Virus record (IMG/VR): IMGVR_UViG_3300032770_000002
Span: 166,254 to 230,253 of that record
Reading direction: 5' to 3' (one strand)
DNA: 64,000 bases
Under the pieces are notes generated by a model that did not search any database, had not been told where the DNA came from, and worked only from the letters and a program-made list of their open reading frames with translations. The position numbers and the translations under genes were made by a program. Positions 604-57,533 of the stretch are shown here, piece by piece (within the stretch, counting starts at the first letter, position 1; every line of letters begins with the position of its first letter).

Positions 604-882
604 GTGAACTACATCGTTTACGAAGAAGACGGTTTCGGAGTGGTGGAGTCACCTTGCGTTGAAGGGCGAAGTCTTGGCGTGTTTTCAGGGACGGAAGCTG
701 AGGTCGCGGCCTACTGTGAAGCTGAGACGCGTAAACTCCACCCGAAGCGAACGAACTGGGATTCACCGCAGATTCGTTTTAAGCCAGCGATTCAACTTAA
801 CCCAAATCACGTAGAATGGCAATCTTCATTAGTTTCGAAGGGGACGAGTGTGTCGGAAAGACCACACAAGCAAGCATCTTGA
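604..882 (+). CDS. hypothetical protein
   Basis: 92-aa ORF; GTTCTA element 6 nt before the GTG. Confidence 0.5.
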   Translation: MNYIVYEEDGFGVVESPCVEGRSLGVFSGTEAEVAAYCEAETRKLHPKRTNWDSPQIRFKPAIQLNPNHVEWQSSLVSKGTSVSERPHKQAS

Positions 883-1478
883 CGGCTCGGCTTAAGGCCT
901 CGCGCATCCCGGCCATCTTGGTCCGAGAACCTGGTGGGACGCCGTTTGGCGAAACATGCCGATCGATCCTAAAGGACCCAAACAACGACCTGTGCCCGGA
1001 AGCTGAGCTGCTCTTGATGAACGCTAGCCGCTCGCAACTTGTCAGCACAGTCATCTTGCCAGCTTTGAATGAAGGCGTTACCGTAATTGCCGATCGCTTT
1101 CATGACTCGACCATCGCCTATCAGGGTTACGGGCGTGAATTGGGACAGAAGGCCGAAGACGTTGTCAACGTCGCCATCGGTGACGTCATCCCAGACATTA
1201 CCTTTTACCTGTGGGCGGCCAAGGGCACGAAGGAACGCCGACAAATTCAGCGTGGAGCTCCGCCAACTGACAAGTTTGAGTCGCTAGACCAGGCCTTTTT
1301 TGCTAGGGTGCGTGAAGGCTACGAGCACATCATGACTCATAATGCGCGCGTTGCGTGCATCGAATCTAGCGGCGCCATTGACCAGGTTTCAGACGCAATT
1401 TGGAGCAAGCTACTCAGCTGGAAGGAGTGGTGCGTAAATCGGCCCAAAAAGCCCTGGGAGCCAAGTCTCAGCTTGTGA
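816..1478 (+). CDS. tmk: thymidylate (dNMP) kinase
   Basis: FISFEGDECVGKTTQ P-loop, REPGGT, ADRFHDSTIAYQG, PDITFYL motifs. Confidence 0.92.
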   Translation: MAIFISFEGDECVGKTTQASILTARLKASRIPAILVREPGGTPFGETCRSILKDPNNDLCPEAELLLMNASRSQLVSTVILPALNEGVTVIADRFHDSTIAYQGYGRELGQKAEDVVNVAIGDVIPDITFYLWAAKGTKERRQIQRGAPPTDKFESLDQAFFARVREGYEHIMTHNARVACIESSGAIDQVSDAIWSKLLSWKEWCVNRPKKPWEPSLSL

Positions 1479-3679: not shown

Positions 3680-3686
3680 GGTTAAA

Positions 3687-4792: not shown

Positions 4793-4794
4793 AC

Positions 4795-10668: not shown

Positions 10669-11171
10669 ACGCCCGCAATCTTATCGACCGGTTGGTTGAA
10701 ACGTCTGACTTGACGTTTGTCCCGATGGACGCTGACGAGATCCGGCAGGTTCAGTCTATTGCCGCTGGACAGCTGGCCAACGTGGACAATCTTTACTTCA
10801 TTAACCAGGACATTACTGATTATCACAGCCTTAACATCGACATCCCGCAGGAGTATTTGCGCAAGAAGGTTGGACACGGCCTTGAATCGGGTGACGTTCA
10901 CGGCGAGTTTTACGGATTCGGTCGAATGGCCTTCACACCTTCATCTCTTTTACGGTCTGAAATTGGAAGAGTTCCAGTTGTCTCTGGCTTGCACGTCATG
11001 GTGTTAAAGAGCAGCCAAGGGTGGGTTATTGGAACCACTCGCGGAGGGTCATACGGTGGCATAACTTTTTACAAGGACCACCCGATGCATGACCTCAACG
11101 CGGCCATCCAGAAGTTCATTGCCACGCTGGAAGTCATTGCAAATGGACAAAATTCCCGGTTTGACAGCTGA
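10665..11171 (+). CDS. hypothetical protein (N-terminus NARNLIDRLVE)
   Basis: TTG 10665 overlaps the upstream TGA; N-terminal motif shared with other putative head proteins. Confidence 0.6.
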   Translation: MNARNLIDRLVETSDLTFVPMDADEIRQVQSIAAGQLANVDNLYFINQDITDYHSLNIDIPQEYLRKKVGHGLESGDVHGEFYGFGRMAFTPSSLLRSEIGRVPVVSGLHVMVLKSSQGWVIGTTRGGSYGGITFYKDHPMHDLNAAIQKFIATLEVIANGQNSRFDS

Positions 11172-12126
11172 CGAACATGTCTAGCCGCTTGGCGTAGGGC
11201 GTCAGTCTATGGAAGTCGACCCACTCCAGAAAGTTGTCCAGGTCATTCTGGTCCAAGTTGGTCAGCCCGAGATAGTCAAGGAACGTGAACATCAGCCCGT
11301 CTGGGCGCGCAAGCTGAAGGCTGCGCATAAATTCACCCGTTGAAAATTCAAAGACGCGGCGCACGCGCTTCGTCACGGTTGTGATTTCGGGCTTTACGCC
11401 CAATGACGCCCACGTCAGCTCCTTTCCAGCACACGGCCCAGACGGCCCGCCAGTCCGTATCGGATATGTCCTAAAGACGCCATAGTAGCTCCAGTCAAGT
11501 CCACCAAGCCCATTGCGCTCAACTGCAACCCTCGGCAGCGTTGAGCGTGACGTGACGTGTGGAAAGAGCCCAAAATTCGTGTCGAGCAACAGGCCTTGTG
11601 AGCACTCAAAGATGGCCAAGTTGGAACTGATGTGCGAGATCAGGTTGAAGTAGGCCTCGTTGTCAACGACGACGATGTCCTGGTTGAGTGAGAAGAAGTC
11701 ATGTTCAATGACTGACTCAACACGGCGGTGGATAAACTTCCCTGCCCGGGCCATCCCTGTCCCTGACCCAGTTGACGAAATTCGCCTTACCAGGTCGGAT
11801 TCGTCGGCCTTCATCTCAGGCATTAAGACGGCCGCGTGCTCGTGGATGTAAATCGGCTTTTTGACGGCGCGCCAGTCTCGTTGAAGAAGTTCGAGTTCGA
11901 TGACTGAGTCTGGGCCCATCAAGATCGAGTCGGCCCAAAAGCTTGAAGCCGGGATGGAGCGCGTTGACCCTTGGGTGCTCGTGTGTCCGGAGTTCGGGCC
12001 GTTTTCACCAATGACGGTCAAGTGGAGTCCCGGGTATTCAGCCCTCAGTTTCTTGGCCAAAAATTCAGCCGCTGAGGCTTTTCCTTCACTGCCATATTGC
12101 CCGCCAAAGACAACGACGTGACGCAT
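11134..12126 (-). CDS. purZ: adenylosuccinate synthetase homologue, PurZ/PurZ0-like
   Basis: GGQYGSEGK (Ser where PurA has the catalytic Asp), PNSGHT, STGSGTG, ECSQGLLLD..FPHVTSRS, RTYPIRTGGPSGP, TTVTKRVRRV, TFLDY; 330 aa. Confidence 0.75.
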   Translation of the reverse strand: MRHVVVFGGQYGSEGKASAAEFLAKKLRAEYPGLHLTVIGENGPNSGHTSTQGSTRSIPASSFWADSILMGPDSVIELELLQRDWRAVKKPIYIHEHAAVLMPEMKADESDLVRRISSTGSGTGMARAGKFIHRRVESVIEHDFFSLNQDIVVVDNEAYFNLISHISSNLAIFECSQGLLLDTNFGLFPHVTSRSTLPRVAVERNGLGGLDWSYYGVFRTYPIRTGGPSGPCAGKELTWASLGVKPEITTVTKRVRRVFEFSTGEFMRSLQLARPDGLMFTFLDYLGLTNLDQNDLDNFLEWVDFHRLTPYAKRLDMFVSCQTGNFVHLQ

Positions 12127-12150
12127 GAGCTGAAGAACGTTCTATCGACC
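12127..12150. promoter_or_regulatory. bidirectional class 2 element (palindrome AGAACGTTCT)
   Basis: GTTCTT (minus) and GTTCTA (plus) each lie exactly 6 nt before the ATGs at 12126 and 12151. Confidence 0.65.
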
Positions 12151-12663: not shown

Positions 12664-12674
12664 TGTGGTATATT
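12646..12674 (+). promoter_or_regulatory. class 1 promoter, leaderless
   Basis: TTTACA-N17-TATATT, then ATG 6 nt later (12681). Confidence 0.85.
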
Positions 12675-12680
12675 AACGGC

Positions 12681-13769
12681 ATGATACGGATTGACAACGC
12701 GCCTGTTCCAAACGTGGTCTCGGACCGCAAACTGGGCCTTGAGATCGAGATTGATCTCGGCAACAATGGGGACCTCAGCGACCTTCCAGACATTCAAGGC
12801 TGGATCAAAAAGGGTGACGGCTCGCTCACGCACGGCTACGAATACACGTTCAACGGACCGTGCACACCGTCAACATCGAAGGAACGGTGTGAACGATTCT
12901 GTCAGTCGATTAAAGATGTGAACGTTCACCGCTCTGGCGGCTTTCACGTTCATGTCCAGGGCAACAACTATTCACACGAGGACGCATACAACCTTTGCTT
13001 GATTTACACGAAATTCCAGGACGTCATCAACAAGCTTGTGGCGCCTTCTCGAGTCAGCAACACCTACTGCGAAGCCTATTCGTGGACGTCACTCCGACAT
13101 CACACTCCGGCGTCATTCGCCCAGGCCTACAATTTGACGCCGCTTGTCAGCAGTCGTGGCTCCGCGAAAAACGTGGCCAACCGCTATCGGGCAGTCAACA
13201 CGAACATGCTAGCTTGCCGTGACGAGGCCGACCGCAGCATTGAATTTCGACAGGGCAGTGTCAGCAAGCGATTTGGCGTGGTCTACGGGTGGCCTTGCTT
13301 CCTTGCGGCATTGACTGAGTTGGCCCAGTGCAAAGACCTCTTCGACGAAGTCCTTAGTGCGCGGTCCATTCAACTTCGCGACCTCTTGGCCGTGCTTCAC
13401 GCCTGGGAGTCCAAGTCCGGTTCAACGGGCGTCGCCGACTGGGTGGAGTGGCGATACAATTACCTGAATCAGAAGCCTGACGACGCTGAACTTCGCCTCG
13501 CCTTGGAAGCCATCGCTGAGAAGCCAATCGGTCTTTATGGCCTGTCTCGCAAGATCGACATCAACCTGGCCGTGACAAAGCGGATCATTGATGACCTCTT
13601 GGCCAAGGGCCTCATCTTCAAGCGGGCCAACTCGACAGCTTATGTCACGTCCTATGAGTTTAAGGCTGAGGCCGACCTGAAGCAGATGATTGAGGCTTTG
13701 AAGAGCCGAGCGGCCAGTCTTACACCGCCTCCGCCAATGCCGGCCACCCTGCCTCCGCCACAAACATGA
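12681..13769 (+). CDS. putative amidoligase (COOH-NH2 ligase) 1
   Basis: LGLEIEI, DGSL..GYE, SGGFHVHV, NTYC, RYRAVN, SIEFRQ; possible C-terminal HTH and Pro-rich tail. Confidence 0.8.
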   Translation: MIRIDNAPVPNVVSDRKLGLEIEIDLGNNGDLSDLPDIQGWIKKGDGSLTHGYEYTFNGPCTPSTSKERCERFCQSIKDVNVHRSGGFHVHVQGNNYSHEDAYNLCLIYTKFQDVINKLVAPSRVSNTYCEAYSWTSLRHHTPASFAQAYNLTPLVSSRGSAKNVANRYRAVNTNMLACRDEADRSIEFRQGSVSKRFGVVYGWPCFLAALTELAQCKDLFDEVLSARSIQLRDLLAVLHAWESKSGSTGVADWVEWRYNYLNQKPDDAELRLALEAIAEKPIGLYGLSRKIDINLAVTKRIIDDLLAKGLIFKRANSTAYVTSYEFKAEADLKQMIEALKSRAASLTPPPPMPATLPPPQT

Positions 13770-15651: not shown

Positions 15652-16002
15652 ATGACAGAATTGTTGACAGGCCGATCACGGCGAGGTTCAGAACCTTGGC
15701 TAGGTGTCGACCTTGACGCTACTTTGGCCACCCACAAAGAGGGCTCTGGCATTGATTCCATCGGTGAGCCAGTGCCTGGCATGCTTGAGAAGGTTAAGCG
15801 CGCATTGCGGGCCGGACGCAAGGTGAAGGTCTTCACCGCGCGAGCGGGTGACCCTAGGCAAATTCCGCTCATTCAGCAGTGGACAGTCAAACATGGGCTT
15901 GGAAAGCTCGAAGTGACCAACGAAAAAGACGAGAACTGTGAAGAGATTTGGGACGACCGTGCCAAGAGCGTGGTTCCTAACAAAGGACGCTTTGCCAACT
16001 AG
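15652..16002 (+). CDS. HAD-superfamily phosphatase-like protein
   Basis: GVDLDATLA (DxDxT), VFTAR, K...WDDRA. Confidence 0.7.
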   Translation: MTELLTGRSRRGSEPWLGVDLDATLATHKEGSGIDSIGEPVPGMLEKVKRALRAGRKVKVFTARAGDPRQIPLIQQWTVKHGLGKLEVTNEKDENCEEIWDDRAKSVVPNKGRFAN

Positions 16003-16006
16003 ATTT

Positions 16007-17143
16007 ATGAGTGAAGAGAACCAACAGGTGCCGGAATTTGACGTTCTAACTCCAGACATTCCACTGCCGCAAGTCGTGGCGAGGCAGGAAATTGCGGATG
16101 AACGGAAGGGAGCGTTTCGATTCAGCTTTATCGGGTCTGGCCAGGGTGGCGGGAGAATTGCGGCGACATTCCGCGCCCTGGGCTACAAGCGCGTTTGCGC
16201 GATCAACACGGCGCGTCAGGACCTGGCGTCGCTCCCAGCCGACGTTAAGAAACTCGTTATCGGCGATGGAGAAGGAGGTGCTGGCAAAGACCCAGCCGTG
16301 GCGAAGGCAGCGTTTGATAAAAACGCTGAAAATGTCCTAGACCTGATGCGGGCGTCATTTGGCCAAGTGTATGACCGAACAATCATCTGTGTTGGGGCCG
16401 GCGGTGGAACTGGCGCTGGAACGGTGATCGGCCTTGTCGACAAAGCGCGTGAGCTTCAGGTTGCCAGCAAGTGTCCGACTGACAAGGTCGGCGTCATCGT
16501 TGCCCTGCCCAAGGTGACCGAAGGCCGGCGTCCAAGCATCAACGCTCACACCGTCTTGTTATCATTGGTCGCCTACGTTGAACAGGGCTTTGTCTCACCG
16601 CTTATCGTTCTTGACAACGAGCGAATGAGCTCACTCTATCCTGGGCTCGCGATCGATCCATTCTGGGACACGGCCAATCAAAGCGTCTGTCGGCTGTTTG
16701 ACCTCTTCAACATGATCTGCGTTCAAAATTCGACATACACCGCGTTCGACCCGGCTGATTACAAGTCGATCCTCGACTCAGGCCTGATCGTCTTTGGGGC
16801 CACGCCCGTCGCCAACTGGTCGGAGGCCGGCCAAATCAGCTCCGCACTGCGAGACAACTTGAAGAAAAACATTCTTGCAGGAGGTGTCAACCTGTCAACT
16901 GGAACGGTCGCCGCGGCAATCGTTATTGCTGGAAAGAGCGTCTTAAGCCAAGTGCCGCACGAGCACCTCGACCAGGCCTTCGATCAATTGACAAGGTTGT
17001 TGAAAACAAACAGCATGGTGCACCGTGGCATCTACAGCGGAAACAAGGACTCCATGGCCATTTACACCGCAATTGGCGGCCTGGCCGCACCGACTGAGAA
17101 GCTGGACGAGCTGGCCAAAATCGGCGGGATAAGCGGTAAATAA
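16007..17143 (+). CDS. tubulin/FtsZ-family GTPase (PhuZ/TubZ/CetZ-like)
   Basis: IGSGQGGGRIA, AINTA, GAGKDP, GAGGGTGAG signature, LDNE, FDPADY (T7 loop); start ATG 16007. Confidence 0.9.
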   Translation: MSEENQQVPEFDVLTPDIPLPQVVARQEIADERKGAFRFSFIGSGQGGGRIAATFRALGYKRVCAINTARQDLASLPADVKKLVIGDGEGGAGKDPAVAKAAFDKNAENVLDLMRASFGQVYDRTIICVGAGGGTGAGTVIGLVDKARELQVASKCPTDKVGVIVALPKVTEGRRPSINAHTVLLSLVAYVEQGFVSPLIVLDNERMSSLYPGLAIDPFWDTANQSVCRLFDLFNMICVQNSTYTAFDPADYKSILDSGLIVFGATPVANWSEAGQISSALRDNLKKNILAGGVNLSTGTVAAAIVIAGKSVLSQVPHEHLDQAFDQLTRLLKTNSMVHRGIYSGNKDSMAIYTAIGGLAAPTEKLDELAKIGGISGK

Positions 17144-17455: not shown

Positions 17456-18298
17456 CTAGTCCCTAATTGCCCGGTCGAGGACTTCTGAATAGTGGTCAAT
17501 TTGGTTGTGCTTAAACCGCCTGACCCAGGCCGGGTGGCTGACTCGCCGAATCGGTGTCAACCCTAATTTTCTCAAGCCTTCGTGGGCTACGTTGCCCATG
17601 GCGATGATCTTCAACGTTGGTTTCCAGACCATCAAAGCCTGAATCAGGTTGGCTTCAGTCGGGTGAATGATGTTTGTCCACATTAGGTCCGATTCAAGCA
17701 CGTTGCTTTTTTCAAGGGCCAAGCTAATGTAACTGGCGGCGTCCCGGTCGTCGAAAAATGGCCAATGTTCGAAGTCCAAATATCGGTTGATTTCTTCACC
17801 TACTAAGACGGCCCGCGCTCGAATGTGCCCGCTCAGATTTTTGAGCCTAGGGTCAAGGGCTTCCGGAAACTGTGAATGGCGAAGCGCCGTCATTCGTTCG
17901 ATGGCGACGCGCGGCGTGTGCGAACCTGTCCACACGATGACGTCCGGGCGTGGAGCTTGGAGTGTCTCACACTTGAGCAAGGCCTTTTGGAGCGTGCTAG
18001 ACGTGATGATGTTGACAGCTCCAAATCGAAGCATGACTCTGTCGATGGCGCGAGCGGCTGCGAGAAAATTCTCTGATGAATCGGCAAGTTCTTTAACCCA
18101 GTTTGTGCAAACAATGACGAGATGATCACACGAAAGATCAATCGATTTTCTGACGATTTCGGTCAAGTAGATAAAGCGTCTTGACGATGACGACTTATCC
18201 ACGCGAATCACACTTGACTTAACCGTCGGTCCGACCACTTTTTGAATCAAGTCAACCATTTCGTGGCTAAAGTCATCTATGCAGATCAGTCCACGCAT
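17456..18298 (-). CDS. hypothetical protein with C-terminal uracil-DNA-glycosylase-like domain
   Basis: VLVGEE..WPFF..WTN..IIAMGNVA..SHPAWVRR resembles UDG-superfamily motifs. Confidence 0.5.
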   Translation of the reverse strand: MRGLICIDDFSHEMVDLIQKVVGPTVKSSVIRVDKSSSSRRFIYLTEIVRKSIDLSCDHLVIVCTNWVKELADSSENFLAAARAIDRVMLRFGAVNIITSSTLQKALLKCETLQAPRPDVIVWTGSHTPRVAIERMTALRHSQFPEALDPRLKNLSGHIRARAVLVGEEINRYLDFEHWPFFDDRDAASYISLALEKSNVLESDLMWTNIIHPTEANLIQALMVWKPTLKIIAMGNVAHEGLRKLGLTPIRRVSHPAWVRRFKHNQIDHYSEVLDRAIRD

Positions 18299-18321: not shown

Positions 18322-21135
18322 ATGAATGAGCCAATGCCAACACTGAATGAGCGCGTTGAGATCTTAGATGACCTACCAAAACCGATAATTGACGACGCTT
18401 CTGCTGCACCTGAACCAGCTCGCCTGACGCGAGTCTTTTCAAAGTCAGGAATTTGCCCATTTGACGACGTCACGTGGATCAAGCGAGACGTCGACATCAC
18501 CGATGACAAGGGTAAGGTCGTCTTCACGCAGAAGGGCGTCGAGACTCCAGAATTTTGGTCCGACCTGGCTGTCAAGATCGTCGCTTCGAAGTATTTTTGG
18601 GGCGAAAAGAACACCGACCAGCGTGAACACTCCGTGCGCCAGTTGATTCATCGCGTGTGTGACACCATTGCGACGTGGGCCGTTGAAGGACGATACGTTC
18701 ACCCTGACGACGAGACGCTCTTCTACAACGAACTTTGCTGGCTTTGCCTGCATCAACACGCGTCTTTTAATTCGCCCGTTTGGTTTAACGTTGGGCTGTT
18801 CCACCAATATGAAGCCGGGCGCGGCAGTGAAGGCGGGTGGGCTTGGGACCAAGACCTCGGCGAAGCTGTGAGGGTCAGGACGATGTATGAGAAGCCACAG
18901 TGCTCGGCTTGCTTCATCGTGTCCGTCGCTGACAACATGGAGGCACTCCTTGACTTGGCCAAGACTGAGGCGATGCTCTTCAAGTTTGGAAGCGGAACTG
19001 GGACGGACCTGACGCCCATTCGTTCATTTCGTGAGAAACTCTCCGGCGGTGGGTCGCCGTCAGGCCCGATGAGTTTTTTGCGCGTCTACGACCAGGTTGC
19101 TGGCATCGTCAAGTCAGGCGGCCGAACTCGTCGTGCGGCGAAGATGAACACCATCCGTGACTGGCACCCTGACATCGAGGAGTTCATTAACGCGAAGCCA
19201 GTTGAGGAACGAAAAGCGCGGGCCCTAATCGAGTCAGGCTATGATGGCTCCATTAACGGTGACGCCTACTCGAGCGTGATGTATCAGAATGAGAACCTTT
19301 CTGTTCGAGTCAGCGACCAGTTCATGAAGGCAGCCACGAATGGCGATGGAACGTGGTGGACAAAAGCGGTCACGAGTGGAGACCGGGTTGAGAAGAAAGA
19401 CGCCAAGGACTTGCTGCACAAGATGGCCGAAGCAGCTTGGTTCTGTGGTGACCCAGGCGTGCAGTTTGACGGCGTCATCCAGCGTTACCACACGTGTGCT
19501 GGAACGGAGCCGATTCACAGCACAAACCCATGTGCTGAATATGTCTTCATCAACAACACGTCGTGCAACCTCGCCTCAATTAACCTCGTCAAGTTCATGG
19601 AAGGCGAGGTGTTCAACGTCGAGCGGTTCAAAGCCGCGGTGCGGCTCATCTTTACGGCCCAAGAGATCTTGTTTGACAACTCGAGCTATCCAACCAAGAC
19701 GATTGCCGAGAACTCGCACATCTTCAGGACTGTAGGGCTTGGCTTTGCGAACCTTGGCTCGCTGTTGATGGGCCTTGGCATTCCATATAACTCTGACCAA
19801 GGCCGTAGCATTGCCGCTTCGATTACGGCCATCATGACGGGTGAAGCTTACGCCACGTCGGCTGGAATGGCCAAGACGCTGGGACCGTTTCCGGGGTTCT
19901 ATGACGCGCGCTGTTCGCACGTCAAGCACCCGGTCAAGGCGAACAATGTTGAGTCGATGCGCGACGTCTTAAACCTCCACGCCGCACACGCGAGCAAGCT
20001 CAAGACTCCAGGGCACCGCTATCTCGATGCCGCCGCAAACGAGTGTTGGCTGCGGGCGATTGGACTGTTCAACTGCCACGGTGTGCGCAACGCCCAGGCA
20101 ACGGTCATTGCGCCAACTGGAACGATCGCATTCATGATGGACTGCGACACGACCGGGATAGAGCCAGAGCTTAGCTTGGTCAAGGTTAAGTCGCTCATCG
20201 GTGGCGGGTCCTTGACGATCGTCAATCGCTCCATCGGTCGGGTGCTTCGCCAGCTCGGCTACAGTGAGCCTGAAATTGATGCCGCGATCAAACACGTGGA
20301 GAAATATGGCCACCTTGAGGCCATCAGCGAGGACATCAAGTCGCCGCTCAGGATTGACGACCACCACGACGTCTTTGACACGTCACTGCCGGCCGGGCCG
20401 AGCAAGCGCTCCATCCCATACATGGCCCACGTCCAGATGATGGCTGCAGTTCAGCCGTTCATCTCTGGGGCGATTTCAAAGACGATCAACATGCCAGAAA
20501 GCTCCACGGTCGAAGACGTGAAGCAGGCTTACGTGGAAGCGTGGAAGTCTGGTCTGAAGTGTGTGGCCATCTACCGTGATGGCTCTAAACGAGCCCAGCC
20601 ATTAAACGTCAAAAAGTTTGGTCAAGACAAAGCAGCGGACCCGGCGTTAAATGGCCACGGTGTTTATCTCCCAAATCGACACCGGCTCCCTGACACCCGG
20701 AAGGCCGTGACGCACAAGTTCAGCGTTGGTGGCCATGAGGGTTACCTGACTGTCGGCCTCTTTGAAAACGACATGCCAGGTGAGCTGTTCATCACGATGG
20801 CCAAGGAGGGTTCGACGGTAGGCGGCCTGATGGACACGATTGGCACGCTGACAAGTTTGGCGCTGCAGTATGGCGTGCCACTCGAAGCTTTAATCCGCAA
20901 GTTTCGGTCAACTCACTTCGAGCCATCTGGCATTACGACAAATCCAAAAATCCGGATGTCGGCCTCGATCATCGACTACATATTCCACTGGATGGCCCTT
21001 GAATTTGACCACGATGACGAAGTTTCCAGCGTCAGTGACGAGGTAAAGACGTGCCCACATTGCGGCCACGTGGCGCAGCGTAGTGGGACGTGTTACACTT
21101 GCACGAATTGCGGAAGCAGTCTCGGTTGCAGTTGA
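18322..21135 (+). CDS. nrdJ: class II (B12-dependent) ribonucleotide reductase
   Basis: FNSPVWFN, QCSACF, GGRTRRAAKM, TNPCAE, CNLASINL, IAPTGTI, ISGAISKTIN; TSCPD domain and C-terminal Zn ribbon. Confidence 0.95.
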   Translation: MNEPMPTLNERVEILDDLPKPIIDDASAAPEPARLTRVFSKSGICPFDDVTWIKRDVDITDDKGKVVFTQKGVETPEFWSDLAVKIVASKYFWGEKNTDQREHSVRQLIHRVCDTIATWAVEGRYVHPDDETLFYNELCWLCLHQHASFNSPVWFNVGLFHQYEAGRGSEGGWAWDQDLGEAVRVRTMYEKPQCSACFIVSVADNMEALLDLAKTEAMLFKFGSGTGTDLTPIRSFREKLSGGGSPSGPMSFLRVYDQVAGIVKSGGRTRRAAKMNTIRDWHPDIEEFINAKPVEERKARALIESGYDGSINGDAYSSVMYQNENLSVRVSDQFMKAATNGDGTWWTKAVTSGDRVEKKDAKDLLHKMAEAAWFCGDPGVQFDGVIQRYHTCAGTEPIHSTNPCAEYVFINNTSCNLASINLVKFMEGEVFNVERFKAAVRLIFTAQEILFDNSSYPTKTIAENSHIFRTVGLGFANLGSLLMGLGIPYNSDQGRSIAASITAIMTGEAYATSAGMAKTLGPFPGFYDARCSHVKHPVKANNVESMRDVLNLHAAHASKLKTPGHRYLDAAANECWLRAIGLFNCHGVRNAQATVIAPTGTIAFMMDCDTTGIEPELSLVKVKSLIGGGSLTIVNRSIGRVLRQLGYSEPEIDAAIKHVEKYGHLEAISEDIKSPLRIDDHHDVFDTSLPAGPSKRSIPYMAHVQMMAAVQPFISGAISKTINMPESSTVEDVKQAYVEAWKSGLKCVAIYRDGSKRAQPLNVKKFGQDKAADPALNGHGVYLPNRHRLPDTRKAVTHKFSVGGHEGYLTVGLFENDMPGELFITMAKEGSTVGGLMDTIGTLTSLALQYGVPLEALIRKFRSTHFEPSGITTNPKIRMSASIIDYIFHWMALEFDHDDEVSSVSDEVKTCPHCGHVAQRSGTCYTCTNCGSSLGCS

Positions 21136-21487: not shown

Positions 21488-21772
21488 GTGAAGACGCTCA
21501 ATTTGCAAGTCGGTGCGATGTGCGGCATGCCAAGCCAGACGTGCCTCATGTCCAAGAAAAATCGTGAAGCTCTTCAACTTGACGTCAACGGCCTGGTCGT
21601 TGTGCGGTCCAATGACCAAGACACCTCGGTGGTTCGACGCATCCTTAAGGCTCCAAACATCCCGCAAAAGGACGCCTTCGTGTTCTTGTCACCTGACGAC
21701 CTAAACTTGCTCAATGTCAACATTGCAGACAACGTCGAGCTCAGCCAAGACACCGAGGGAGTGGAGACTTAG
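21488..21772 (+). CDS. hypothetical protein
   Basis: ORF, start reassigned to the GTG after the promoter. Confidence 0.55.
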   Translation: MKTLNLQVGAMCGMPSQTCLMSKKNREALQLDVNGLVVVRSNDQDTSVVRRILKAPNIPQKDAFVFLSPDDLNLLNVNIADNVELSQDTEGVET

Positions 21773-22544
21773 CGACTTTCTTTTAAACGAAACCGAAGTG
21801 GCCTATCTGACGTGTTTGGCTAACGTCATGGACAATGGAAAACCGACCGGTCCAAGGGGCCAGCAAACGCGTGAAGTCTTAAACGCGTCATTCAAAATCA
21901 GGCACCCATCTTCAGCCCCAATTCGAACGTGTGACCTAGAACGGAACAAGGTCATTGCGGAGTATACCCACAAGGAGATGGAGCTTTATCTTAGCGGTTC
22001 GAATAGCGTCAGTGACTTTGCAAAGGCAAGCCAATTCTGGAAGAAAATTGCCAACCCAGATGGGACCATCAATTCGGCCTACGGTTATTTGATTTGGCAC
22101 GAGAAAAGCTGTGGTGACCCAACAATGGAGGTCCCACATTTTGAACCAGGACGGATGAATGGAAGTTTGGCCATGCGGACTCCGTGGGAGTGGGCCCGCA
22201 ATTCCATGCTTCAAGATAAGGACACCAGACAAGCATTCCTTCGGTTTAGCCTGCCACGTCACCAGTGGGTCGGCAACCGCGACCAAGTCTGCACGATGCA
22301 CGGTCACTTTGTCATCCGCGACGACAAGCTGAACTTCTCCATCGTGATGCGGTCAAATGATTGTTTTAAGGGCCTCGTCTATGACCTTCCGTTTTTCATT
22401 AAGCTCATGGAATTGATGGCCGACGAGCTGAAGCCGACTTATCCAAATCTCCAAGTTGGCGAGTATTTTCACCTCGCCCACAGTCTCCACATCTACGAGT
22501 CAGACATCCCAAAGATCTTGAAGATGCTAGGCAGTTCTGCTTAG
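21714..22544 (+). CDS. thymidylate synthase homologue, probable dCMP (hydroxy)methylase type
   Basis: NSAYG, DTRQA, DQVCT (catalytic Cys), MRSNDCFKGLVYD (Asp at the E. coli ThyA N177 position), HSLHIYE; start uncertain. Confidence 0.8.
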   Translation: MSTLQTTSSSAKTPREWRLSDFLLNETEVAYLTCLANVMDNGKPTGPRGQQTREVLNASFKIRHPSSAPIRTCDLERNKVIAEYTHKEMELYLSGSNSVSDFAKASQFWKKIANPDGTINSAYGYLIWHEKSCGDPTMEVPHFEPGRMNGSLAMRTPWEWARNSMLQDKDTRQAFLRFSLPRHQWVGNRDQVCTMHGHFVIRDDKLNFSIVMRSNDCFKGLVYDLPFFIKLMELMADELKPTYPNLQVGEYFHLAHSLHIYESDIPKILKMLGSSA

Positions 22545-22545
22545 T

Positions 22546-23055
22546 GTGTCAAGACAAATCGTCCACTACTTGGGCCACGGCATGTCAGCCTGCATGCGGG
22601 AAGGGCCCCCTTCGCTGTGGCCTGACAACCATAAGTGGTCAAGTGACTGGAAGGACGTTACATGTGGAGAATGTCTCCTTGGAAAAAACGAAGTCCACAC
22701 GTTCATGATTTCGCCTGATGGTCGAAGCATCACGTGTCTTCGGTGCCACATGACGAGCTTTAATCCAACGGACGTCGAGCGACACTACTGCAGCTACTGT
22801 GATGTCTTCCATGACGACCTTTGGCCTCCAGCAAGGCGGGCGTGGATGCATTCACTTCTGGCCACGGTTAACCAAGTCTATGACGAAGACACGTTTTCGG
22901 TGACGGATCGACAAGGACAATCACACTGCATTTACGTTTCCAACCATGACGTCAATGTTGGCGACATCGGCATTCTTCGATATAACGATCGTGATTGGTC
23001 TTGGAAGCGGTTGGAAAAGCGCGAAACCGGCGTCGTCCTGATCTCCAGAAAATAA
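22546..23055 (+). CDS. Cys/His-rich hypothetical protein
   Basis: VTCGEC, ITCLRC..YCSYC..FH; GTTCTG 6 nt upstream. Confidence 0.6.
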   Translation: MSRQIVHYLGHGMSACMREGPPSLWPDNHKWSSDWKDVTCGECLLGKNEVHTFMISPDGRSITCLRCHMTSFNPTDVERHYCSYCDVFHDDLWPPARRAWMHSLLATVNQVYDEDTFSVTDRQGQSHCIYVSNHDVNVGDIGILRYNDRDWSWKRLEKRETGVVLISRK

Positions 23056-23058
23056 TTG

Positions 23059-23086
23059 TTTACAAACCTCAGAAGTGTGGTATATT
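23059..23086 (+). promoter_or_regulatory. class 1 promoter, leaderless
   Basis: TTTACA-N16-TATATT; ATG at 23093. Confidence 0.85.
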
Positions 23087-23092
23087 GGTTCC

Positions 23093-23281
23093 ATGAGTGA
23101 TGCACTTCGAGACAAAAATGGACGTGCCATCGGTTACGTGACCGAGGACAGCAGCCGCAAAACGGTCCGTGACGTCAACGGCCGGCCTCAAGGCAGCTAC
23201 GACTCACGAGACAACGCAACTCGCGATAAAAATGGGCGCGTGACCGGATACGGTGACCAGACATTCGGCTTTCTTCGATAA
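23093..23281 (+). CDS. small protein with three RDxNGR repeats
   Basis: LRDKNGRAIG / VRDVNGRPQG / TRDKNGRVTG. Confidence 0.7.
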   Translation: MSDALRDKNGRAIGYVTEDSSRKTVRDVNGRPQGSYDSRDNATRDKNGRVTGYGDQTFGFLR

Positions 23282-24531
23282 TGAACTTGACGACATCAGT
23301 TGGGTTTGAACTCGAGTTTAGCGGGTCAAATCTTGACCGTGTTGAACGCGAGCTTCGCTCTAAGGGGATCGACTGTCACAATTACGGCCGGTGGCGCCAC
23401 TCTGACGGCGACCTGTGGGACCTTAAGACCGACTCGTCATGTGGGTTTGAAGCCGTCAGCCCGATATTGCAGACCTATGAGGAGCTGGTTGATGCTGCTG
23501 GTGTCGGCGCCTTGATCGCCAATGTCGGTGGAACTGCGACAGAGAGGTGCGGGCTTCACGTTCACATCGGCGGCGGTGACTTCAGTTCGCTTCAACTTGA
23601 AAACGTCTTTCGATTTTTCACACGGTATGAGTTCGCCTTTTTTCTCATGGTGCCTCCGGCTAGGCGGACAAACATCTACTGCAAGCGGCTTTCACCAGCT
23701 ACGATCAACTCAATCAAGCGGGCGTCATTTCAGCGCAATGACTGGTGGATTCACACGTGGACTGACAAGAATGTCTGGCTGAATGGGCGCCGTTGGCCGG
23801 ACATCAGGACGCTTGAGTTTCGCATCATGCCCGGGTCACTCAGCCCATACTTCATCATTGGCTACGTGACGTTTCTTCAGTGCGTGATCAACACGGTCAA
23901 GGACCGAACGATTAACTGGGGCATGGCTCGCAGCAAGGATGACCGCTCGCTCTTCCAGACGATGCTTGGTCAGTCCGGATTTTATGGCCCATGGATTAGT
24001 GAAGACCTTAAGGAACTCTACCTCACCGGGCGCAAGTGGGCGATCGAGCGGTATAAGCTGGCGAACGAGTTAGTGTCGGGTTTCTTTGAAATGACGCGGG
24101 TCGTTCCTAAAATCCCGTCGGTCGACTGCCGGCCAAGTTGGGACCGTGGAGACACATCGCTCCCACAACGGACACGCCGTGTGAGGCGACGAGTGCCGGA
24201 AGTAGAGGTGCGAAGCCCCGCGTCATCTCCGCCTCCGCCATCGACGGCTTATTCACCGATTCAGCAGCCTCAGTTTATAAGCTCAACGCCTGTGGTGACG
24301 TCATTTGCTACTCAGACGACGCAGACGATGCCAGAAATTTCAATCAGCAACGCTACCACTACTTCCGGCGATTGGATTGTCTCATGGGGACAAGGAGGAA
24401 CGAGCCACTTGAACATGGGCCAAGCTTCTAGCTCAGCGGAAACAACTCCAACCGCAGAACGCAGTGAAACGACAGCAACTCCGCCGACGCCGTCGTCCGA
24501 ATCTACACCGTCTGAATCTCAGGGCTCGTAG
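23281..24531 (+). CDS. putative amidoligase 2
   Basis: VGFELEF, TDSSCGFEAVSP, CGLHVHIG, NIYC, TLEFR; long S/T/P-rich tail. Confidence 0.82.
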   Translation: MNLTTSVGFELEFSGSNLDRVERELRSKGIDCHNYGRWRHSDGDLWDLKTDSSCGFEAVSPILQTYEELVDAAGVGALIANVGGTATERCGLHVHIGGGDFSSLQLENVFRFFTRYEFAFFLMVPPARRTNIYCKRLSPATINSIKRASFQRNDWWIHTWTDKNVWLNGRRWPDIRTLEFRIMPGSLSPYFIIGYVTFLQCVINTVKDRTINWGMARSKDDRSLFQTMLGQSGFYGPWISEDLKELYLTGRKWAIERYKLANELVSGFFEMTRVVPKIPSVDCRPSWDRGDTSLPQRTRRVRRRVPEVEVRSPASSPPPPSTAYSPIQQPQFISSTPVVTSFATQTTQTMPEISISNATTTSGDWIVSWGQGGTSHLNMGQASSSAETTPTAERSETTATPPTPSSESTPSESQGS

Positions 24532-24541
24532 TTAGCCCAAG

Positions 24542-25702
24542 ATGAGACAGGCAAAAGCTACTATCGACCAGCTGTTTGAGCGCCAGATTGATGAGATCTG
24601 GCGCCCTCCAAATCTTCCCGATAAGGAGCCTGAAGACATCTTTCAAGACACCATGGACCGCGCTTACGCGGGCTATGAGCAAAAGGCTGGTCGACAGCAG
24701 GTTAATCGGGCATTCGACAACCGTGAAAAGCAGTCCGGTCATCGTAATTTTCTAGACGCTTTGGCGGAACCCGAACAACTTGCAGTCGTCTTCGGGAACC
24801 TCAACTATCAAGTTGAAAATGGCGGATTCACACAGTGGATCGACAACAATTATTACGAAGACACGATCGACAGGCTGCGTGAATTTGGTGACCGATTCAA
24901 GGAACGATTTCCAGTTTTAGGCCGGGTGTTAGCGATCATCGATGAGTTGGAGGAGTATGCCTCGAATTTTGGCGAGGACATGACCCTGCCCAAGTTGACC
25001 GGCCGCGAGTGGGATGAGGACATCGGCAACGCCTTTTACGATGAGGATTGGGACAGGCTCAACGAGCTTACGGGCGGAACTGACATCGACAAGCGCAGGG
25101 TTGACGACGCCACGGAGGATGTGCTCAAGGACATGATCGAACTTTCGGTCGATGAGTCAGAGACCGAAGGCCAGTTTTACTGGGCGATTAAGCGGTCACG
25201 CCTGCATGGCCACGATGAGGAGATTGAGCGTTCGAGCATGACATATGCTGACGAGGACCAGGCTTACGAAGCGGGTGAAAAGAGAGCTGAGGAACTCCAA
25301 AAAGAAGCCATGGAGGAGCAGAATGAGCTCTACGACTTAGCCCGTGAGGAAGCAAAGAATGAACTGGAAAAGGAGCTGCGTGAGGGTCTTGACAAAGACG
25401 TTCATCGGACTTTTGAACGAGCCGACCACGACTATTACGCGATTCACACCGAGGTTCTTGACGCAATTTCTAGCATCCTTCGCACGGAATATAACGTCAA
25501 TTCGTCATTCAGTCAATTTTTCACTCAGGCCATGGGCAAGGTCCGTCAGTCACTTAAACGCGTGGCCGATGTAGCTCGACAAAAACTCTCGTCCGGACTT
25601 GGACGGGCAGCTGGAGCATTGACTCGAGCTTCACAGAAAGTTCGTCCGGGAGAATCTGCGGAAGAATCTGCGAAAGACTCGATCTGTCGACTCATCTCAT
25701 AG
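24542..25702 (+). CDS. acidic protein with DMP19/DUF4375-like motif
   Basis: LNYQVENGGFTQWIDNNY...ADHDYY; D/E-rich middle. Confidence 0.6.
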   Translation: MRQAKATIDQLFERQIDEIWRPPNLPDKEPEDIFQDTMDRAYAGYEQKAGRQQVNRAFDNREKQSGHRNFLDALAEPEQLAVVFGNLNYQVENGGFTQWIDNNYYEDTIDRLREFGDRFKERFPVLGRVLAIIDELEEYASNFGEDMTLPKLTGREWDEDIGNAFYDEDWDRLNELTGGTDIDKRRVDDATEDVLKDMIELSVDESETEGQFYWAIKRSRLHGHDEEIERSSMTYADEDQAYEAGEKRAEELQKEAMEEQNELYDLAREEAKNELEKELREGLDKDVHRTFERADHDYYAIHTEVLDAISSILRTEYNVNSSFSQFFTQAMGKVRQSLKRVADVARQKLSSGLGRAAGALTRASQKVRPGESAEESAKDSICRLIS

Positions 25703-26021: not shown

Positions 26022-26440
26022 AAAGCATCGTCAAATTCGCCTGGCTAAGCACCGGGTTGACGTCGTTGCTCACAGGTCTCGTTACGGGTCTTATGGGAAA
26101 GTTCAACGCTAAAATGGTGGCCAGCATATTAAGCTTGCTGACCATTGCCATCGCCACGTTTTTTGCAATGGGCTACATCTTCAACCAGCCAAATCTTTAT
26201 ACGTGGCCGACGAATGCCACCCCCGTGGCTCTTCCAACGTCGATCATCTTCATCATTGTCGGTTCATCCGTGTTCATTCTGTCAGCCAGAACGCACGGGG
26301 AAGTATATCATCGCTTTGATGTCGAGGACGATCGGTTGGACCTCGTTGAGAGGCGGGTCAATCGCGTTGAATCGATGGTCGCTGAATTACGCCATCAGAA
26401 TGGAAATGGCGAAGTCAGTTCGCGATCACACGATACTTGA
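26018..26440 (+). CDS. multi-TM membrane protein (holin-like?)
   Basis: About three hydrophobic segments and a charged C-terminus. Confidence 0.5.
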   Translation: MKSIVKFAWLSTGLTSLLTGLVTGLMGKFNAKMVASILSLLTIAIATFFAMGYIFNQPNLYTWPTNATPVALPTSIIFIIVGSSVFILSARTHGEVYHRFDVEDDRLDLVERRVNRVESMVAELRHQNGNGEVSSRSHDT

Positions 26441-26996
26441 ACTTAAACCAGTCCGAAGAGTCTTGTTCGGGACTTCCAAGCGGCCGATAAGGAGTGCCTT
26501 TTCGTTTCAACACAACGCCCTCGAACTCAGATCGAAGCGTGTGCTCAGTGAGCAGCTCCCCAAGCAGCCAGTCCTCTGTCACTGAAAACATCCACGGAAG
26601 TCCAAGTTGTCCACTGATCTTGACAGCCGCGGCTTGGCGCACGTCCGGTCCTTGGTCGAGGAGTGAAAAGCCGTCGACGCAGAGAGCCTCAAACGGGTAG
26701 AATTTTGACTTGTAGACCTCACCGTCGAGGACCATCAGTTTGCTGACGTGTGTGAAGTCTTTGGCGTTGAGCGCCGGGTGACGAAATTGTTCGGCTCGTC
26801 GATTGATGATTTGAACCTGTCCATTGATGACGGCCAAGACGGCACGGTCACCGTTGAGCTTTCGCTGGACGACGTCGCCGTTTTTCATGCGCGTCATCAG
26901 TTCTGTAATCTTTGACGCCGTCAATTCTTGGCCTTTGGTTGGCCGCATCGGGAACAGGGGAAAGCTCAGTCCTGGGACGATCAGAGTTCGATTCAT
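26415..26996 (-). CDS. ATP-dependent ligase / capping-type nucleotidyltransferase domain only
   Basis: KLNGDR (motif I), LDGEV (III), FEAL (IIIa), EGVVLK (IV), WFKFK (V); no OB domain. Confidence 0.75.
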   Translation of the reverse strand: MNRTLIVPGLSFPLFPMRPTKGQELTASKITELMTRMKNGDVVQRKLNGDRAVLAVINGQVQIINRRAEQFRHPALNAKDFTHVSKLMVLDGEVYKSKFYPFEALCVDGFSLLDQGPDVRQAAAVKISGQLGLPWMFSVTEDWLLGELLTEHTLRSEFEGVVLKRKGTPYRPLGSPEQDSSDWFKFKYRVIAN

Positions 26997-57474: not shown

Positions 57475-57491
57475 ATTTTTTCAATTTTTTG

Positions 57492-57520
57492 TTTACAACT
57501 TCGGTTCGTTGTGGTATATT
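57492..57520 (+). promoter_or_regulatory. class 1 promoter
   Basis: TTTACA-N17-TATATT; ATG at 57534. Confidence 0.85.
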
Positions 57521-57533
57521 CATCCCAGAGTTT

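What the first reader, a model, noticed from the sequence alone, without database searches (positions are those of the whole stretch)
21714..22544. Thymidylate-synthase homologue with the cytosine-specific Asp: a second modified base alongside PurZ?
Seen: RSNDCFKGLVYD aligns with E. coli ThyA RSCDVFLGLPFN, putting Asp at N177. Established: Asn here selects dUMP, whereas Asp selects dCMP, as in T4 gp42 dCMP hydroxymethylase. Inference: the phage makes 5-methyl-, 5-hydroxymethyl- or 5-hydroxy-dC. A purine (PurZ-like) and a cytosine pathway in one genome, plus kinase, HAD, UDG-like and glycosyltransferase-like genes, would point to a doubly modified genome, which I do not know to be described.
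Basis: partly seen in the sequence, partly recalled or inferred. Interest (0 to 1): 0.82.

Follow-up and report, generated by a model that had tools for sequence, protein, structure and literature searches.

The report
Phage dCMP hydroxymethylase beside a PurZ-like gene
A 230-kb wetland phage carries a thymidylate-synthase relative whose active-site residues match the T4 enzyme that makes 5-hydroxymethyl-dCMP; this is a common kind of phage gene, and its only unusual feature is that the same genome also holds a PurZ-like (2-aminoadenine pathway) gene, whose meaning is unproven.

Summary
ORF 21714..22544(+) is a thymidylate-synthase (TS) fold protein, and RSNDCFKGLVYD aligns with E. coli RSCDVFLGLPFN, which puts Asp224 at N177.

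All five published diagnostic positions equal T4 gp42 dCMP hydroxymethylase (L143D, C146, H147T, D169 kept, N177D). Ser167 and Arg126 indicate a deoxyribonucleotide substrate. The ThyA C-terminal lid is missing, and no DHFR lies near any of 80 relatives. The best sequence and fold matches are MilA and T4 dCMP hydroxymethylase, not ThyA.

The likely product is therefore 5-hydroxymethyl-dCMP, not 5-methyl-dCMP (XP12 type) or 5-hydroxy-dCMP (RB69 type, D169N).

The family is very large (3,560 representative clusters). In relatives it abuts a P-loop dNMP-kinase-like gene, often fused to a UDG-like domain, and sits near dCMP deaminase. A tubulin-encoding lineage that includes this phage has a conserved kinase/UDG-like, TS, amidoligase block.

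The PurZ-like gene has the Asp13-to-Ser hallmark but belongs to an uncharacterised clade. No DatZ, MazZ, DutZ or DpoZ-like partner was found in about 88 kb examined. PurZ was near the TS gene only in this contig.

The enzyme is a new member of a known kind. A genome modified at both A and C is possible but unproven.

The parts
21714..22544 (+). TS-fold deoxycytidylate 5-hydroxymethyltransferase homologue (T4 gp42 type). 276 aa from ATG 21714; alternative starts are GTG 21798 and ATG 21828 (the source's call).
22281..22292 (+). Asp190-Gln-Val-Cys193. Cys193 is the catalytic nucleophile (E. coli C146). Asp190 lies three residues before it, at the L143 position, and is the hydroxymethylase marker.
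   Evidence: Asp at -3 in 200/200 relatives
22350..22385 (+). RSNDCFKGLVYD. Arg213 = R166, Ser214 = S167 (deoxyribose marker), Asp216 = D169 (retained, so not a 5-hydroxy-dCMP synthase), Asp224 = N177 (cytosine specificity).
17456..18298 (-). Member of the family that directly abuts the TS gene in 28 other phage loci. N-terminal TMPK/dNK-like kinase domain, here with a degenerate Walker A (CIDDFSHEMV instead of GxDxxGKST), plus a C-terminal UDG-superfamily domain.
816..1478 (+). Thymidylate-kinase family protein with an intact fold match. Candidate kinase for 5-hm-dCMP (inferred only).
   Evidence: PF02223, 2.8e-37
23281..24531 (+). Amidoligase_2 (glutamine-synthetase-like carboxylate-amine ligase). 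Lies immediately downstream of the TS gene in 9 related loci. Here it is separated from the TS gene by two small ORFs (22546..23055, 23075..23281).
11134..12126 (-). PurZ-like short adenylosuccinate-synthetase homologue (330 aa) with Ser at the PurA Asp13 position. Member of an uncharacterised sister clade of PurZ.
18322..21135 (+). Class II (B12-dependent) ribonucleotide reductase. It heads the same-strand gene run that contains the TS homologue and is also linked to TS in lineage relatives.

Best explanation
The gene encodes a folate-dependent deoxycytidylate 5-hydroxymethyltransferase of the T4 gp42 type.

Inferred mechanism, by homology. Cys193 adds to C6 of dCMP. Asp224, in place of the uracil-selecting Asn177, hydrogen-bonds and protonates N3/N4 of cytosine. 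The methylene of 5,10-methylene-THF is transferred to C5; the cofactor is held by the retained Asp216, Trp109 and Glu88, with Tyr123 and Glu88 as the proton relay. THF then leaves. Position 143 is Asp190 instead of a bulky Leu, and the C-terminal lid that closes ThyA for hydride transfer is absent, so water rather than hydride adds to the exocyclic methylene. The product is 5-hydroxymethyl-dCMP and THF is not oxidised. Ser214 and Arg172 favour the deoxyribonucleotide.

Inferred downstream steps. A phage kinase (candidate: the thymidylate-kinase homologue at 816..1478) and host NDP kinase would give 5-hm-dCTP. The phage family A polymerase would then incorporate it, so phage DNA would carry 5-hydroxymethylcytosine, possibly decorated further.

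Shown here: fold, homology, every diagnostic residue, tree position and gene neighbourhoods. Inferred: the chemistry, the kinase assignment and the extent of C replacement.
For: Sequence and fold.
- Best solved-structure sequence matches are MilA CMP hydroxymethylase (2.6e-15) and T4 dCMP hydroxymethylase (1.9e-11). The best ThyA is only 2.8e-6 and E. coli ThyA about 1e-2.
- Foldseek on a pLDDT 93 model ranks MilA (1e-18) and T4 dCH (1.7e-16) above all ThyAs.
- T4 gp42 finds the gene by tblastn (3e-15); E. coli ThyA does not at E<=1.

Diagnostic positions.
- Positions 143/146/147/169/177 read D-C-T-D-D, the same as T4 gp42. RB69 gp48 is E-C-T-N-D, the XP12 enzyme N-C-P-D-D, SP-10 dUMP hydroxymethylase D-C-N-D-N and E. 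coli ThyA L-C-H-D-N. Their meaning is taken from PMC13326640 and PMC8670742.
- Ser167 and Arg126 are the deoxyribose determinants (PMC5175136).
- Only 15 residues follow Y209, against 55 in ThyA and 61 in the XP12 enzyme.

Tree. ThyA plus the XP12 enzyme are split from gp42, gp48, SP-10 and all 133 relatives (including the query) with 99% SH-aLRT.

Context of 80 related loci.
- DHFR is present in 0/80.
- A separate ThyA or ThyX is present in about 10 loci.
- dCMP deaminase is present in 37/80.
- A TMPK/dNK-like kinase directly abuts the TS gene in 28 loci. Acinetobacter phage HHU4 likewise has both a canonical TS and a D-C-T-D-D paralogue.

Literature. MetaGPA found Asp177 TS homologues to be the domain most strongly associated with cytosine-modified phage contigs.
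Against: - There are no biochemical or nucleoside data.
- Identity to T4 gp42 is only 21-25%.
- The L143D/E rule is a correlation drawn from few characterised enzymes.
- The family has a roughly 25-residue insertion (about residues 129-155, pLDDT about 66) of unknown effect.
- In this phage the partner kinase domain has lost its P-loop.
- No dCTPase, dCMP deaminase or T4 gp1-like kinase was found in about 88 kb, so full replacement of C is not supported.
- About 140 kb of the genome could not be read.
- The only public run is kept as contigs, so no read-level signal of modification is available.
Confidence: 0.75

Rival explanations
1. It is a dCMP methyltransferase (XP12 type) that makes 5-methyl-dCMP by the full reductive TS reaction.
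For: Asp at N177. E. coli and L. casei N177D mutants methylate dCMP (cited in PMC8670742). Asp169 is retained, so folate is probably used.
Against: The XP12 enzyme keeps the ThyA-like C-terminal tail (61 residues after Y209), has Asn rather than Asp at 143, sits next to DHFR and dCMP deaminase, and groups with ThyA in the tree (99% split). The query has a 15-residue tail and Asp at 143. No DHFR occurs in the window, its flanks or 80 related loci.
Confidence: 0.08
2. It is a flavin-dependent 5-hydroxy-dCMP synthase (RB69 gp48 / DLP3 gp80 type), the entry point to O-glycosylated 5-hydroxycytosine.
For: It shares N177D, an acidic residue at 143, Thr147 and the short C-terminus with gp48. Glycosyltransferase genes lie just beyond the window.
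Against: The diagnostic D169N substitution, found in all tested 5-hodCMP synthases, is absent. Asp216 is invariant in the aligned relatives and kept in all but one of the 200 counted. No sugar-nucleotide genes of the arabinose type occur near the TS gene.
Confidence: 0.04
3. It acts on a ribonucleotide (CMP hydroxymethylase like MilA/BcmA) or serves a non-DNA role.
For: MilA is the top sequence and fold match. Eight of 200 relatives carry Ala at position 167, as MilA does.
Against: The query has Ser214 and Arg172, the residues whose introduction into MilA (A176S/K133R) switches it to dCMP. The gene sits among phage replication and nucleotide-metabolism genes (RNR, kinase). Relatives are flanked by dCMP deaminase and dNMP-kinase-like genes.
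Confidence: 0.03
4. It is simply the phage's thymidylate synthase.
For: Databases annotate it and its relatives as 'thymidylate synthase'. No other ThyA or ThyX was seen in the 88 kb examined.
Against: Asp at 177, Thr at 147, Asp at 143, no C-terminal lid and no DHFR. Relatives coexist with a genuine ThyA or ThyX on the same contig. A small sister group with Asn177 shows that the family uses this residue to switch base.
Confidence: 0.02

Closest known systems
T4 gp42 deoxycytidylate hydroxymethylase (PDB 1B49, 1B5D, 6A9A)
   Same: TS fold. Identical residues at the five diagnostic positions (D143, C146, T147, D169, D177). Ser167/Arg126 deoxyribose markers. Lacks the ThyA C-terminal lid. A phage pre-replicative pathway with an associated dNMP kinase in relatives.
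   Different: Only 21-25% identity. A 4-residue deletion before the catalytic Cys and a roughly 25-residue insertion after the 'NSAYG' segment. In this phage no gp56-type dCTPase, gp1-type kinase or alpha/beta-glucosyltransferase was detected.
Asp177 TS homologues of cytosine-modified metagenomic phage contigs (MetaGPA, eLife 2021, PMC8670742)
   Same: Same signature (positions 177 and 147). Same co-occurrence with dCMP deaminase in relatives. Environmental phage origin.
   Different: No carbamoyltransferase or PRA-PH/MazG partner was seen here. Membership of that data set was not tested.
MilA / BcmA CMP hydroxymethylases
   Same: Best sequence and fold match. Asp at 143 and 177. Hydroxymethyl product.
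   Different: MilA has Ala176/Lys133 (ribose preference) and a long C-terminal extension, and it belongs to an antibiotic pathway. The query has Ser/Arg and is a phage gene.
Xanthomonas phage XP12 dCMP methyltransferase
   Same: TS homologue with Asp at 177, acting on dCMP before replication.
   Different: The XP12 enzyme keeps the ThyA tail, has Asn143/Pro147, is adjacent to DHFR and clusters with ThyA. The query does none of these.
RB69 gp48 / DLP3 gp80 5-hydroxy-dCMP synthases (NAR 2026, PMC13326640)
   Same: Short TS homologues with N177D, an acidic residue at 143 and Thr147.
   Different: They carry D169N and use a flavin and O2. The query keeps Asp169.
PurZ / PurZ0 2-aminoadenylosuccinate synthetases (phiVC8, S-2L, Gordonia/Arthrobacter phages)
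   Same: The window's 330-aa protein is a short PurA homologue with the Asp13-to-Ser hallmark. Its best solved relatives are PurZ structures (6FM1, 1.5e-23).
   Different: It falls in a separate, uncharacterised clade that is sister to PurZ. It is not clustered with DatZ, MazZ, DutZ, DmtZ or DpoZ. It sits in a 230-kb phage instead of a 40-70-kb one.

Membership tests
Thymidylate synthase superfamily (PF00303) | TS alpha/beta fold | tested here: met
   Pfam 1.7e-15. AF2 model pLDDT 93.1 with 396 PDB TS-fold matches at E<=1e-3.
Thymidylate synthase superfamily (PF00303) | Catalytic Cys146, phosphate-binding Arg21/Arg126'/Arg166, Glu58, Tyr94, His207/Tyr209 | tested here: met
   C193, R48, R172, R213, E88, Y123, H259 and Y261 align and are invariant or nearly so in the family.
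dCMP hydroxymethylase (T4 gp42 type) | Asp at ThyA N177 (cytosine specificity) | tested here: met
   Asp224. Asp in 200/200 close relatives.
dCMP hydroxymethylase (T4 gp42 type) | Acidic residue at ThyA L143 (admits water; hydroxymethyl product) | tested here: met
   Asp190, three residues before Cys193, as in gp42 and MilA. Asp in 200/200 relatives.
dCMP hydroxymethylase (T4 gp42 type) | Asp169 retained (folate cofactor, not flavin) | tested here: met
   Asp216, invariant in the 81-row alignment; rule.
dCMP hydroxymethylase (T4 gp42 type) | No ThyA-type C-terminal lid; no DHFR dependence | tested here: met
   15 residues after Y209 against 55 in ThyA. DHFR absent in 0/80 related loci and from the window plus flanks.
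dCMP hydroxymethylase (T4 gp42 type) | Deoxyribonucleotide preference (Ser167, Arg126') | tested here: met
   Ser214 and Arg172.
dCMP hydroxymethylase (T4 gp42 type) | Converts dCMP plus CH2-THF to 5-hm-dCMP plus THF | not testable with these tools
   Needs an enzyme assay or LC-MS.
dCMP hydroxymethylase (T4 gp42 type) | Accessory functions for full replacement of C (dCTPase, hm-dCMP kinase) | tested here: inconclusive
   No gp56- or gp1-like gene in about 88 kb. A TMPK homologue is present. The TS-linked kinase has a degenerate P-loop. About 140 kb was not read.
5-hydroxy-dCMP synthase (RB69 gp48 type) | Asn at ThyA D169 | tested here: not met
   Asp216.
dCMP methyltransferase (XP12 type) | ThyA-like C-terminal tail, DHFR partner, clustering with ThyA | tested here: not met
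CMP hydroxymethylase (MilA/BcmA) | Ala at Ser167 and Lys at Arg126' | tested here: not met
   Ser214 and Arg172.
PurZ (2-aminoadenylosuccinate synthetase), for ORF 11134..12126(-) | Short PurA homologue with catalytic Asp13 replaced by Ser | tested here: met
   GGQYGSEGKA. Ser in 123/123 PurZ-group rows and Asp only in E. coli PurA. Rule from PMC12884076.
PurZ (2-aminoadenylosuccinate synthetase), for ORF 11134..12126(-) | Falls inside the characterised PurZ or PurZ0 clade | tested here: not met
   It lies in a separate 52-row clade (96% SH-aLRT) that is sister to phiVC8/Bm1 PurZ, with PurZ0 outside.
PurZ (2-aminoadenylosuccinate synthetase), for ORF 11134..12126(-) | Clustered with dATP/dGTP-clearing enzymes (DatZ, MazZ/DUF550, DutZ, DmtZ) and DpoZ | tested here: not met
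   None in the window plus flanks, nor in five large-phage relatives' neighbourhoods. PolA is only 23-24% identical to DpoZ. A distant branch of the same clade does sit beside dUTPase-, NDT-like (DUF4406) and NUDIX genes.

The most novel reading that the evidence does not exclude
The virion DNA of this 230-kb tubulin-encoding phage carries two pre-replicative base substitutions at once. One is 5-hydroxymethylcytosine, or a derivative built on it by the conserved neighbouring amidoligase and/or a nearby glycosyltransferase. The other is 2-aminoadenine, made by a third, uncharacterised clade of PurZ that works without the usual DatZ/MazZ/DpoZ partners. At least partial substitution at both A and C would result.
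Probability: 0.25. Interest if true: 0.8.

Novelty: new member of a known kind. Interest (0 to 1): 0.45.

Why it matters
Taken alone, the gene adds one more member to a very large, already recognised class of phage dCMP-modifying TS homologues. Its main practical lesson is that 'thymidylate synthase' annotations, and the source's truncated gene call, are wrong for it.

Three points go beyond that:
1. The co-occurrence with a PurZ-hallmark gene is not described in any paper I could find. If both pathways are active, it would be the first genome with a purine and a pyrimidine both replaced before replication. That would bear on evasion of restriction and CRISPR, and on sequencing artefacts.
2. 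The PurZ-like clade found 'solo' in large phages raises the question of whether PurZ can work without dATP clearance, or whether this clade does something else.
3. The conserved kinase/UDG-like, TS, amidoligase block in this lineage is a concrete, testable candidate for a new cytosine hypermodification pathway.

Tried and rejected
- Near-identity DNA search of 20 kb against 50,697 phage records found no match.
- Read-level evidence of modification was not obtainable. The only public run is the source wetland metagenome and is kept as contigs.
- Looked for PurZ and TS together in known phages. Microbacterium phage Goodman (PurZ0) has no TS homologue. Acinetobacter phage HHU4 (two TS homologues) has no annotated PurZ. 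No paper holds both 'PurZ' and 'dCMP hydroxymethylase'.
- PurZ near TS relatives: 1 of 80 loci, the window's own contig.
- Searches for DatZ, MazZ, DpoZ, DHFR, dCMP deaminase, beta-glucosyltransferase, gp56, gp1, ThyA, ThyX, Dut-like, NDT-like and NUDIX genes in the window plus flanks were all negative.
- A DatZ-profile scan of IMG/VR did not return this contig, but the method is insensitive.
- Glyco_transf_9 as a DNA glycosyltransferase: its relatives lie near a TS gene in only 2 of 10 loci. Otherwise they sit in a conserved block with a RecA-like gene and unknown genes. This is kept only as a weak lead.
- Amidoligase as a hypermodification enzyme: its adjacency to TS is confined to one phage lineage, so function cannot be separated from inherited gene order.
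- HAD and glycosyltransferase genes inside the window: none by Pfam or PHROGs.
- Walking the rest of the 230-kb genome stopped for lack of look-ups, and one look-up returned no DNA.
- A profile alignment of 81 diverse relatives was too divergent for the search for related loci; a closer 30-row alignment worked.

Full report
**What is there.**
The window is the last 64 kb of a 230,253-bp metagenomic phage contig (JGI 3300032770 Ga0335085_10000140 = IMGVR_UViG_3300032770_000002). An independent Logan assembly of the same wetland run gives a circularly permuted 230,155-bp contig, so the genome is probably complete. No phage in GenBank resembles it at the DNA level.

The window carries the replication and nucleotide-metabolism module:
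- thymidylate kinase
- PurZ-like gene
- tubulin/TubZ-like gene
- class II ribonucleotide reductase
- SNF2 and XPD-like helicases
- family A polymerase
- DnaB
- NAD-dependent ligase

Structural genes flank it. A T4-type major capsid protein and prohead protease lie further on.

**The observation.**
ORF 21714..22544(+) is intact. It matches Pfam Thymidylat_synt (1.7e-15) and PHROG 160 (2.7e-33). Its motif RSNDCFKGLVYD (residues 213-224) aligns column for column with E. coli ThyA R166-N177 in a 9-row and a 138-row alignment. This puts Asp224 at N177 and Cys193 at C146. The AlphaFold2 model built on 81 relatives has pLDDT 93.1.

The source's gene call starts at Met39 and would delete a conserved N-terminal helix. 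ATG 21714 or GTG 21798 is the more likely start.

**Which reaction.**
Recent work defines diagnostic positions in E. coli numbering (PMC13326640; PMC8670742):
- C146: the nucleophile.
- N177D: selects dCMP.
- L143D/E: goes with hydroxymethyl rather than methyl products.
- D169N: marks the flavin-dependent 5-hydroxy-dCMP synthases.
- Position 147: co-varies with cytosine modification.

| Enzyme | 143 | 146 | 147 | 169 | 177 |
|---|---|---|---|---|---|
| Query | D | C | T | D | D |
| T4 gp42 | D | C | T | D | D |
| RB69 gp48 | E | C | T | N | D |
| XP12 dCMP methyltransferase | N | C | P | D | D |
| SP-10 dUMP hydroxymethylase | D | C | N | D | N |
| E. coli ThyA | L | C | H | D | N |

Other points agree:
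- The residues that make MilA prefer CMP (Ala176, Lys133) are Ser214 and Arg172 here, the deoxyribose state.
- The protein ends 15 residues after Tyr209. ThyA has 55 more residues and the XP12 enzyme 61, forming the lid needed for hydride transfer.
- By sequence, MilA (2.6e-15) and T4 dCH (1.9e-11) beat every ThyA (2.8e-6 at best). By fold the order is the same.
- T4 gp42 finds the gene by tblastn (3e-15), and E. coli ThyA does not.
- In a maximum-likelihood tree of 138 rows, ThyA and the XP12 enzyme are separated from gp42, gp48, the SP-10 enzyme and all relatives by a 99% SH-aLRT branch.
- In that tree 123 rows share D-C-T-D-D. A seven-row group with Asn177 is nested near the query, which fits this residue switching the base.
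- Among 200 close relatives, Asp at -3 from the Cys is universal, and C/T/S/D/D at 146/147/167/169/177 holds in 190.

I conclude, at about 0.75 confidence, that the enzyme makes 5-hydroxymethyl-dCMP.

**How common, and in what company.**
The family is very large: 1,126 proteins at E<=1e-5 in the 90%-clustered collection and 3,560 representative clusters at E<=1e-3.

Context in 80 IMG/VR loci, each with 10-kb flanks:

| Feature near the TS gene | Loci |
|---|---|
| DHFR | 0 |
| Separate ThyA or ThyX | about 10 |
| dCMP deaminase | 37 |
| UDG-superfamily gene | 26-40 |
| P-loop kinase family present | 29 |
| ...of which other loci where it directly abuts TS on the same strand | 28 |

The kinase family has the Walker A motif GxDxxGKST. 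Its best solved relatives are SPbeta YorR, deoxyguanosine kinase and thymidylate kinases. Its longer members carry a C-terminal UDG-superfamily domain. This is the gp42-plus-gp1 logic of T4.

The window's member of this family is ORF 17456..18298(-). It is clearly homologous (2e-35 and 3e-17), but it has moved 3.4 kb away onto the other strand and its Walker A is degenerate. The closest lineage relatives (L033, L078) show the same degeneration. A separate intact thymidylate-kinase homologue (816..1478) is the better kinase candidate here. That assignment is inference.

**Lineage.**
Five to nine loci (L033-L035, L053, L074, L076, L078, L079, L081) share tubulin, RNR, cpYpsA and other families with the window. 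All have a contiguous kinase/UDG-like, TS, Amidoligase_2 block. In the window two small ORFs separate TS from the amidoligase (23281..24531). ATP-dependent amide ligases can act on modified phage DNA bases (CmoY, PMC12783734). However, 5-hmC offers no carboxylate, and the adjacency is confined to one lineage. I record it as a lead only.

**Glycosyltransferases.**
Glycosyltransferases are absent from the window. A Glyco_transf_9 gene and a faint Glycos_transf_2 gene lie 5 and 15 kb past its end. Relatives of the former are near TS in only 2 of 10 loci.

**The PurZ side.**
ORF 11134..12126(-) is a 330-aa PurA homologue. Its best solved relatives are phiVC8 PurZ (1.5e-23), S-2L PurZ and PurZ0. 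It and 119 relatives carry Ser at the PurA Asp13 position, the hallmark reported for all phage PurZ.

In a tree it belongs to a separate 52-row clade (96% SH-aLRT). That clade is sister to characterised PurZ, with PurZ0 outside, and no member of it is characterised.

In six large-phage contexts, including this one, the gene is 'solo'. No DatZ, MazZ, Dut-like, NDT-like, NUDIX or TS gene lies within 10 kb. The window's PolA is only 23-24% identical to DpoZ. A distant branch of the clade, on roughly 16-kb contigs, does sit next to dUTPase-family, DUF4406 (NDT-like) and NUDIX genes, which recalls the DutZ/DmtZ set of PurZ0 phages. So a Z-pathway role for the clade is plausible.

PurZ was found within 10 kb of a TS relative only in this contig (1/80). 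It therefore looks like a recent addition to a lineage that already had the cytosine module.

**Verdict.**
The product can be narrowed to 5-hydroxymethyl-dCMP. The enzyme is an ordinary member of a known and abundant class.

The doubly modified genome remains a hypothesis:
- Both entry enzymes are present.
- None of the pool-clearing enzymes that enforce full replacement was found in about 88 kb read.
- No read-level or chemical evidence exists.
- No paper in the searchable library mentions PurZ together with dCMP hydroxymethylase, so the combination appears undescribed.

Noticed in passing
window 17456-18298 (-): Fusion of a thymidylate-kinase/dNK-like domain with a UDG-superfamily domain. 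Its family abuts the TS homologue in 28 other phage loci. In this phage and its closest relatives the Walker A motif is degenerate while the UDG-like half stays conserved. It may act as a pseudo-kinase or base-flipping module.
   Followed up: yes
window 12528-13769 (+), 23281-24531 (+), 57489-58634 (+), 58683-59645 (+): Three Amidoligase_2 paralogues in one window (PHROG, Pfam and atlas evidence). The third is followed by a class II glutamine-amidotransferase-like gene. Their function is unknown.
   Followed up: partly
window 2615-5466: Compact cluster on both strands: radical SAM/SPASM protein (2615-3679, -), a very short split transketolase-like pair (3687-4160 pyrimidine-binding domain; 4157-4792 TPP-binding domain, -) and a SAM methyltransferase (4795-5466, +), next to the thymidylate kinase. 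It may be a small-molecule or sugar pathway.
   Followed up: no
window 11134-12126 (-) and loci L021-L023, L026, L027, L125: The PurZ-like protein defines an uncharacterised Ser13 clade, sister to PurZ. In large phages it is 'solo' among small unknown ORFs. In roughly 16-kb contigs with a protein-primed PolB it sits beside dUTPase-, DUF4406/NDT-like, NUDIX and GT2 genes.
   Followed up: partly
window 12097-12663 (+): Circularly permuted YpsA SLOG-family protein (PF12694, 3.6e-36) divergently adjacent to the PurZ-like gene. It is also present in lineage relatives that lack PurZ nearby.
   Followed up: partly
window 24542-25702 (+): 386-aa acidic protein with a DMP19-like domain (DNA-mimic family, 1.8e-6) directly after the amidoligase. 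It may be an anti-restriction or DNA-mimic function. It is unique to this contig among 80 loci.
   Followed up: no
window 15938-17143 (+): Tubulin/TubZ-like GTPase (PhuZ-type) conserved across the lineage that shares the TS block. The phage also has a T4-type capsid protein and prohead protease outside the window.
   Followed up: partly
window 21714-21830: The public gene call for the TS homologue starts at Met39 and truncates a conserved helix. A strong GAGGGAGTGGAG Shine-Dalgarno-like run at 21755-21766 has no canonical start codon at the expected distance, so the true start (ATG 21714 or GTG 21798) is unresolved.
   Followed up: partly
L014:15066-16307 (just beyond the window end; contig positions 3921-5159): Glyco_transf_9 (heptosyltransferase-family, GT-B) gene in a conserved block with a 539-aa, a 151-aa, a 457-aa and a RecA-like gene. 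Homologues lie within 3 kb of a TS/kinase-UDG pair in two other contigs (L121/L084 and L123).
   Followed up: partly
tree; alignment: Inside the D-C-T-D-D family, a seven-member group has Asn at 177 (probable dUMP hydroxymethylases) and 8 of 200 relatives have Ala at 167 (the MilA-like ribose marker). Base and sugar specificity therefore appear to have switched repeatedly within the family.
   Followed up: no
window 26415-26996 (-) and 60609-62729 (+): Two ligases: a short ATP-dependent ligase-like protein (193 aa, conserved in lineage relatives) and a full NAD-dependent LigA with a BRCT domain.
   Followed up: no
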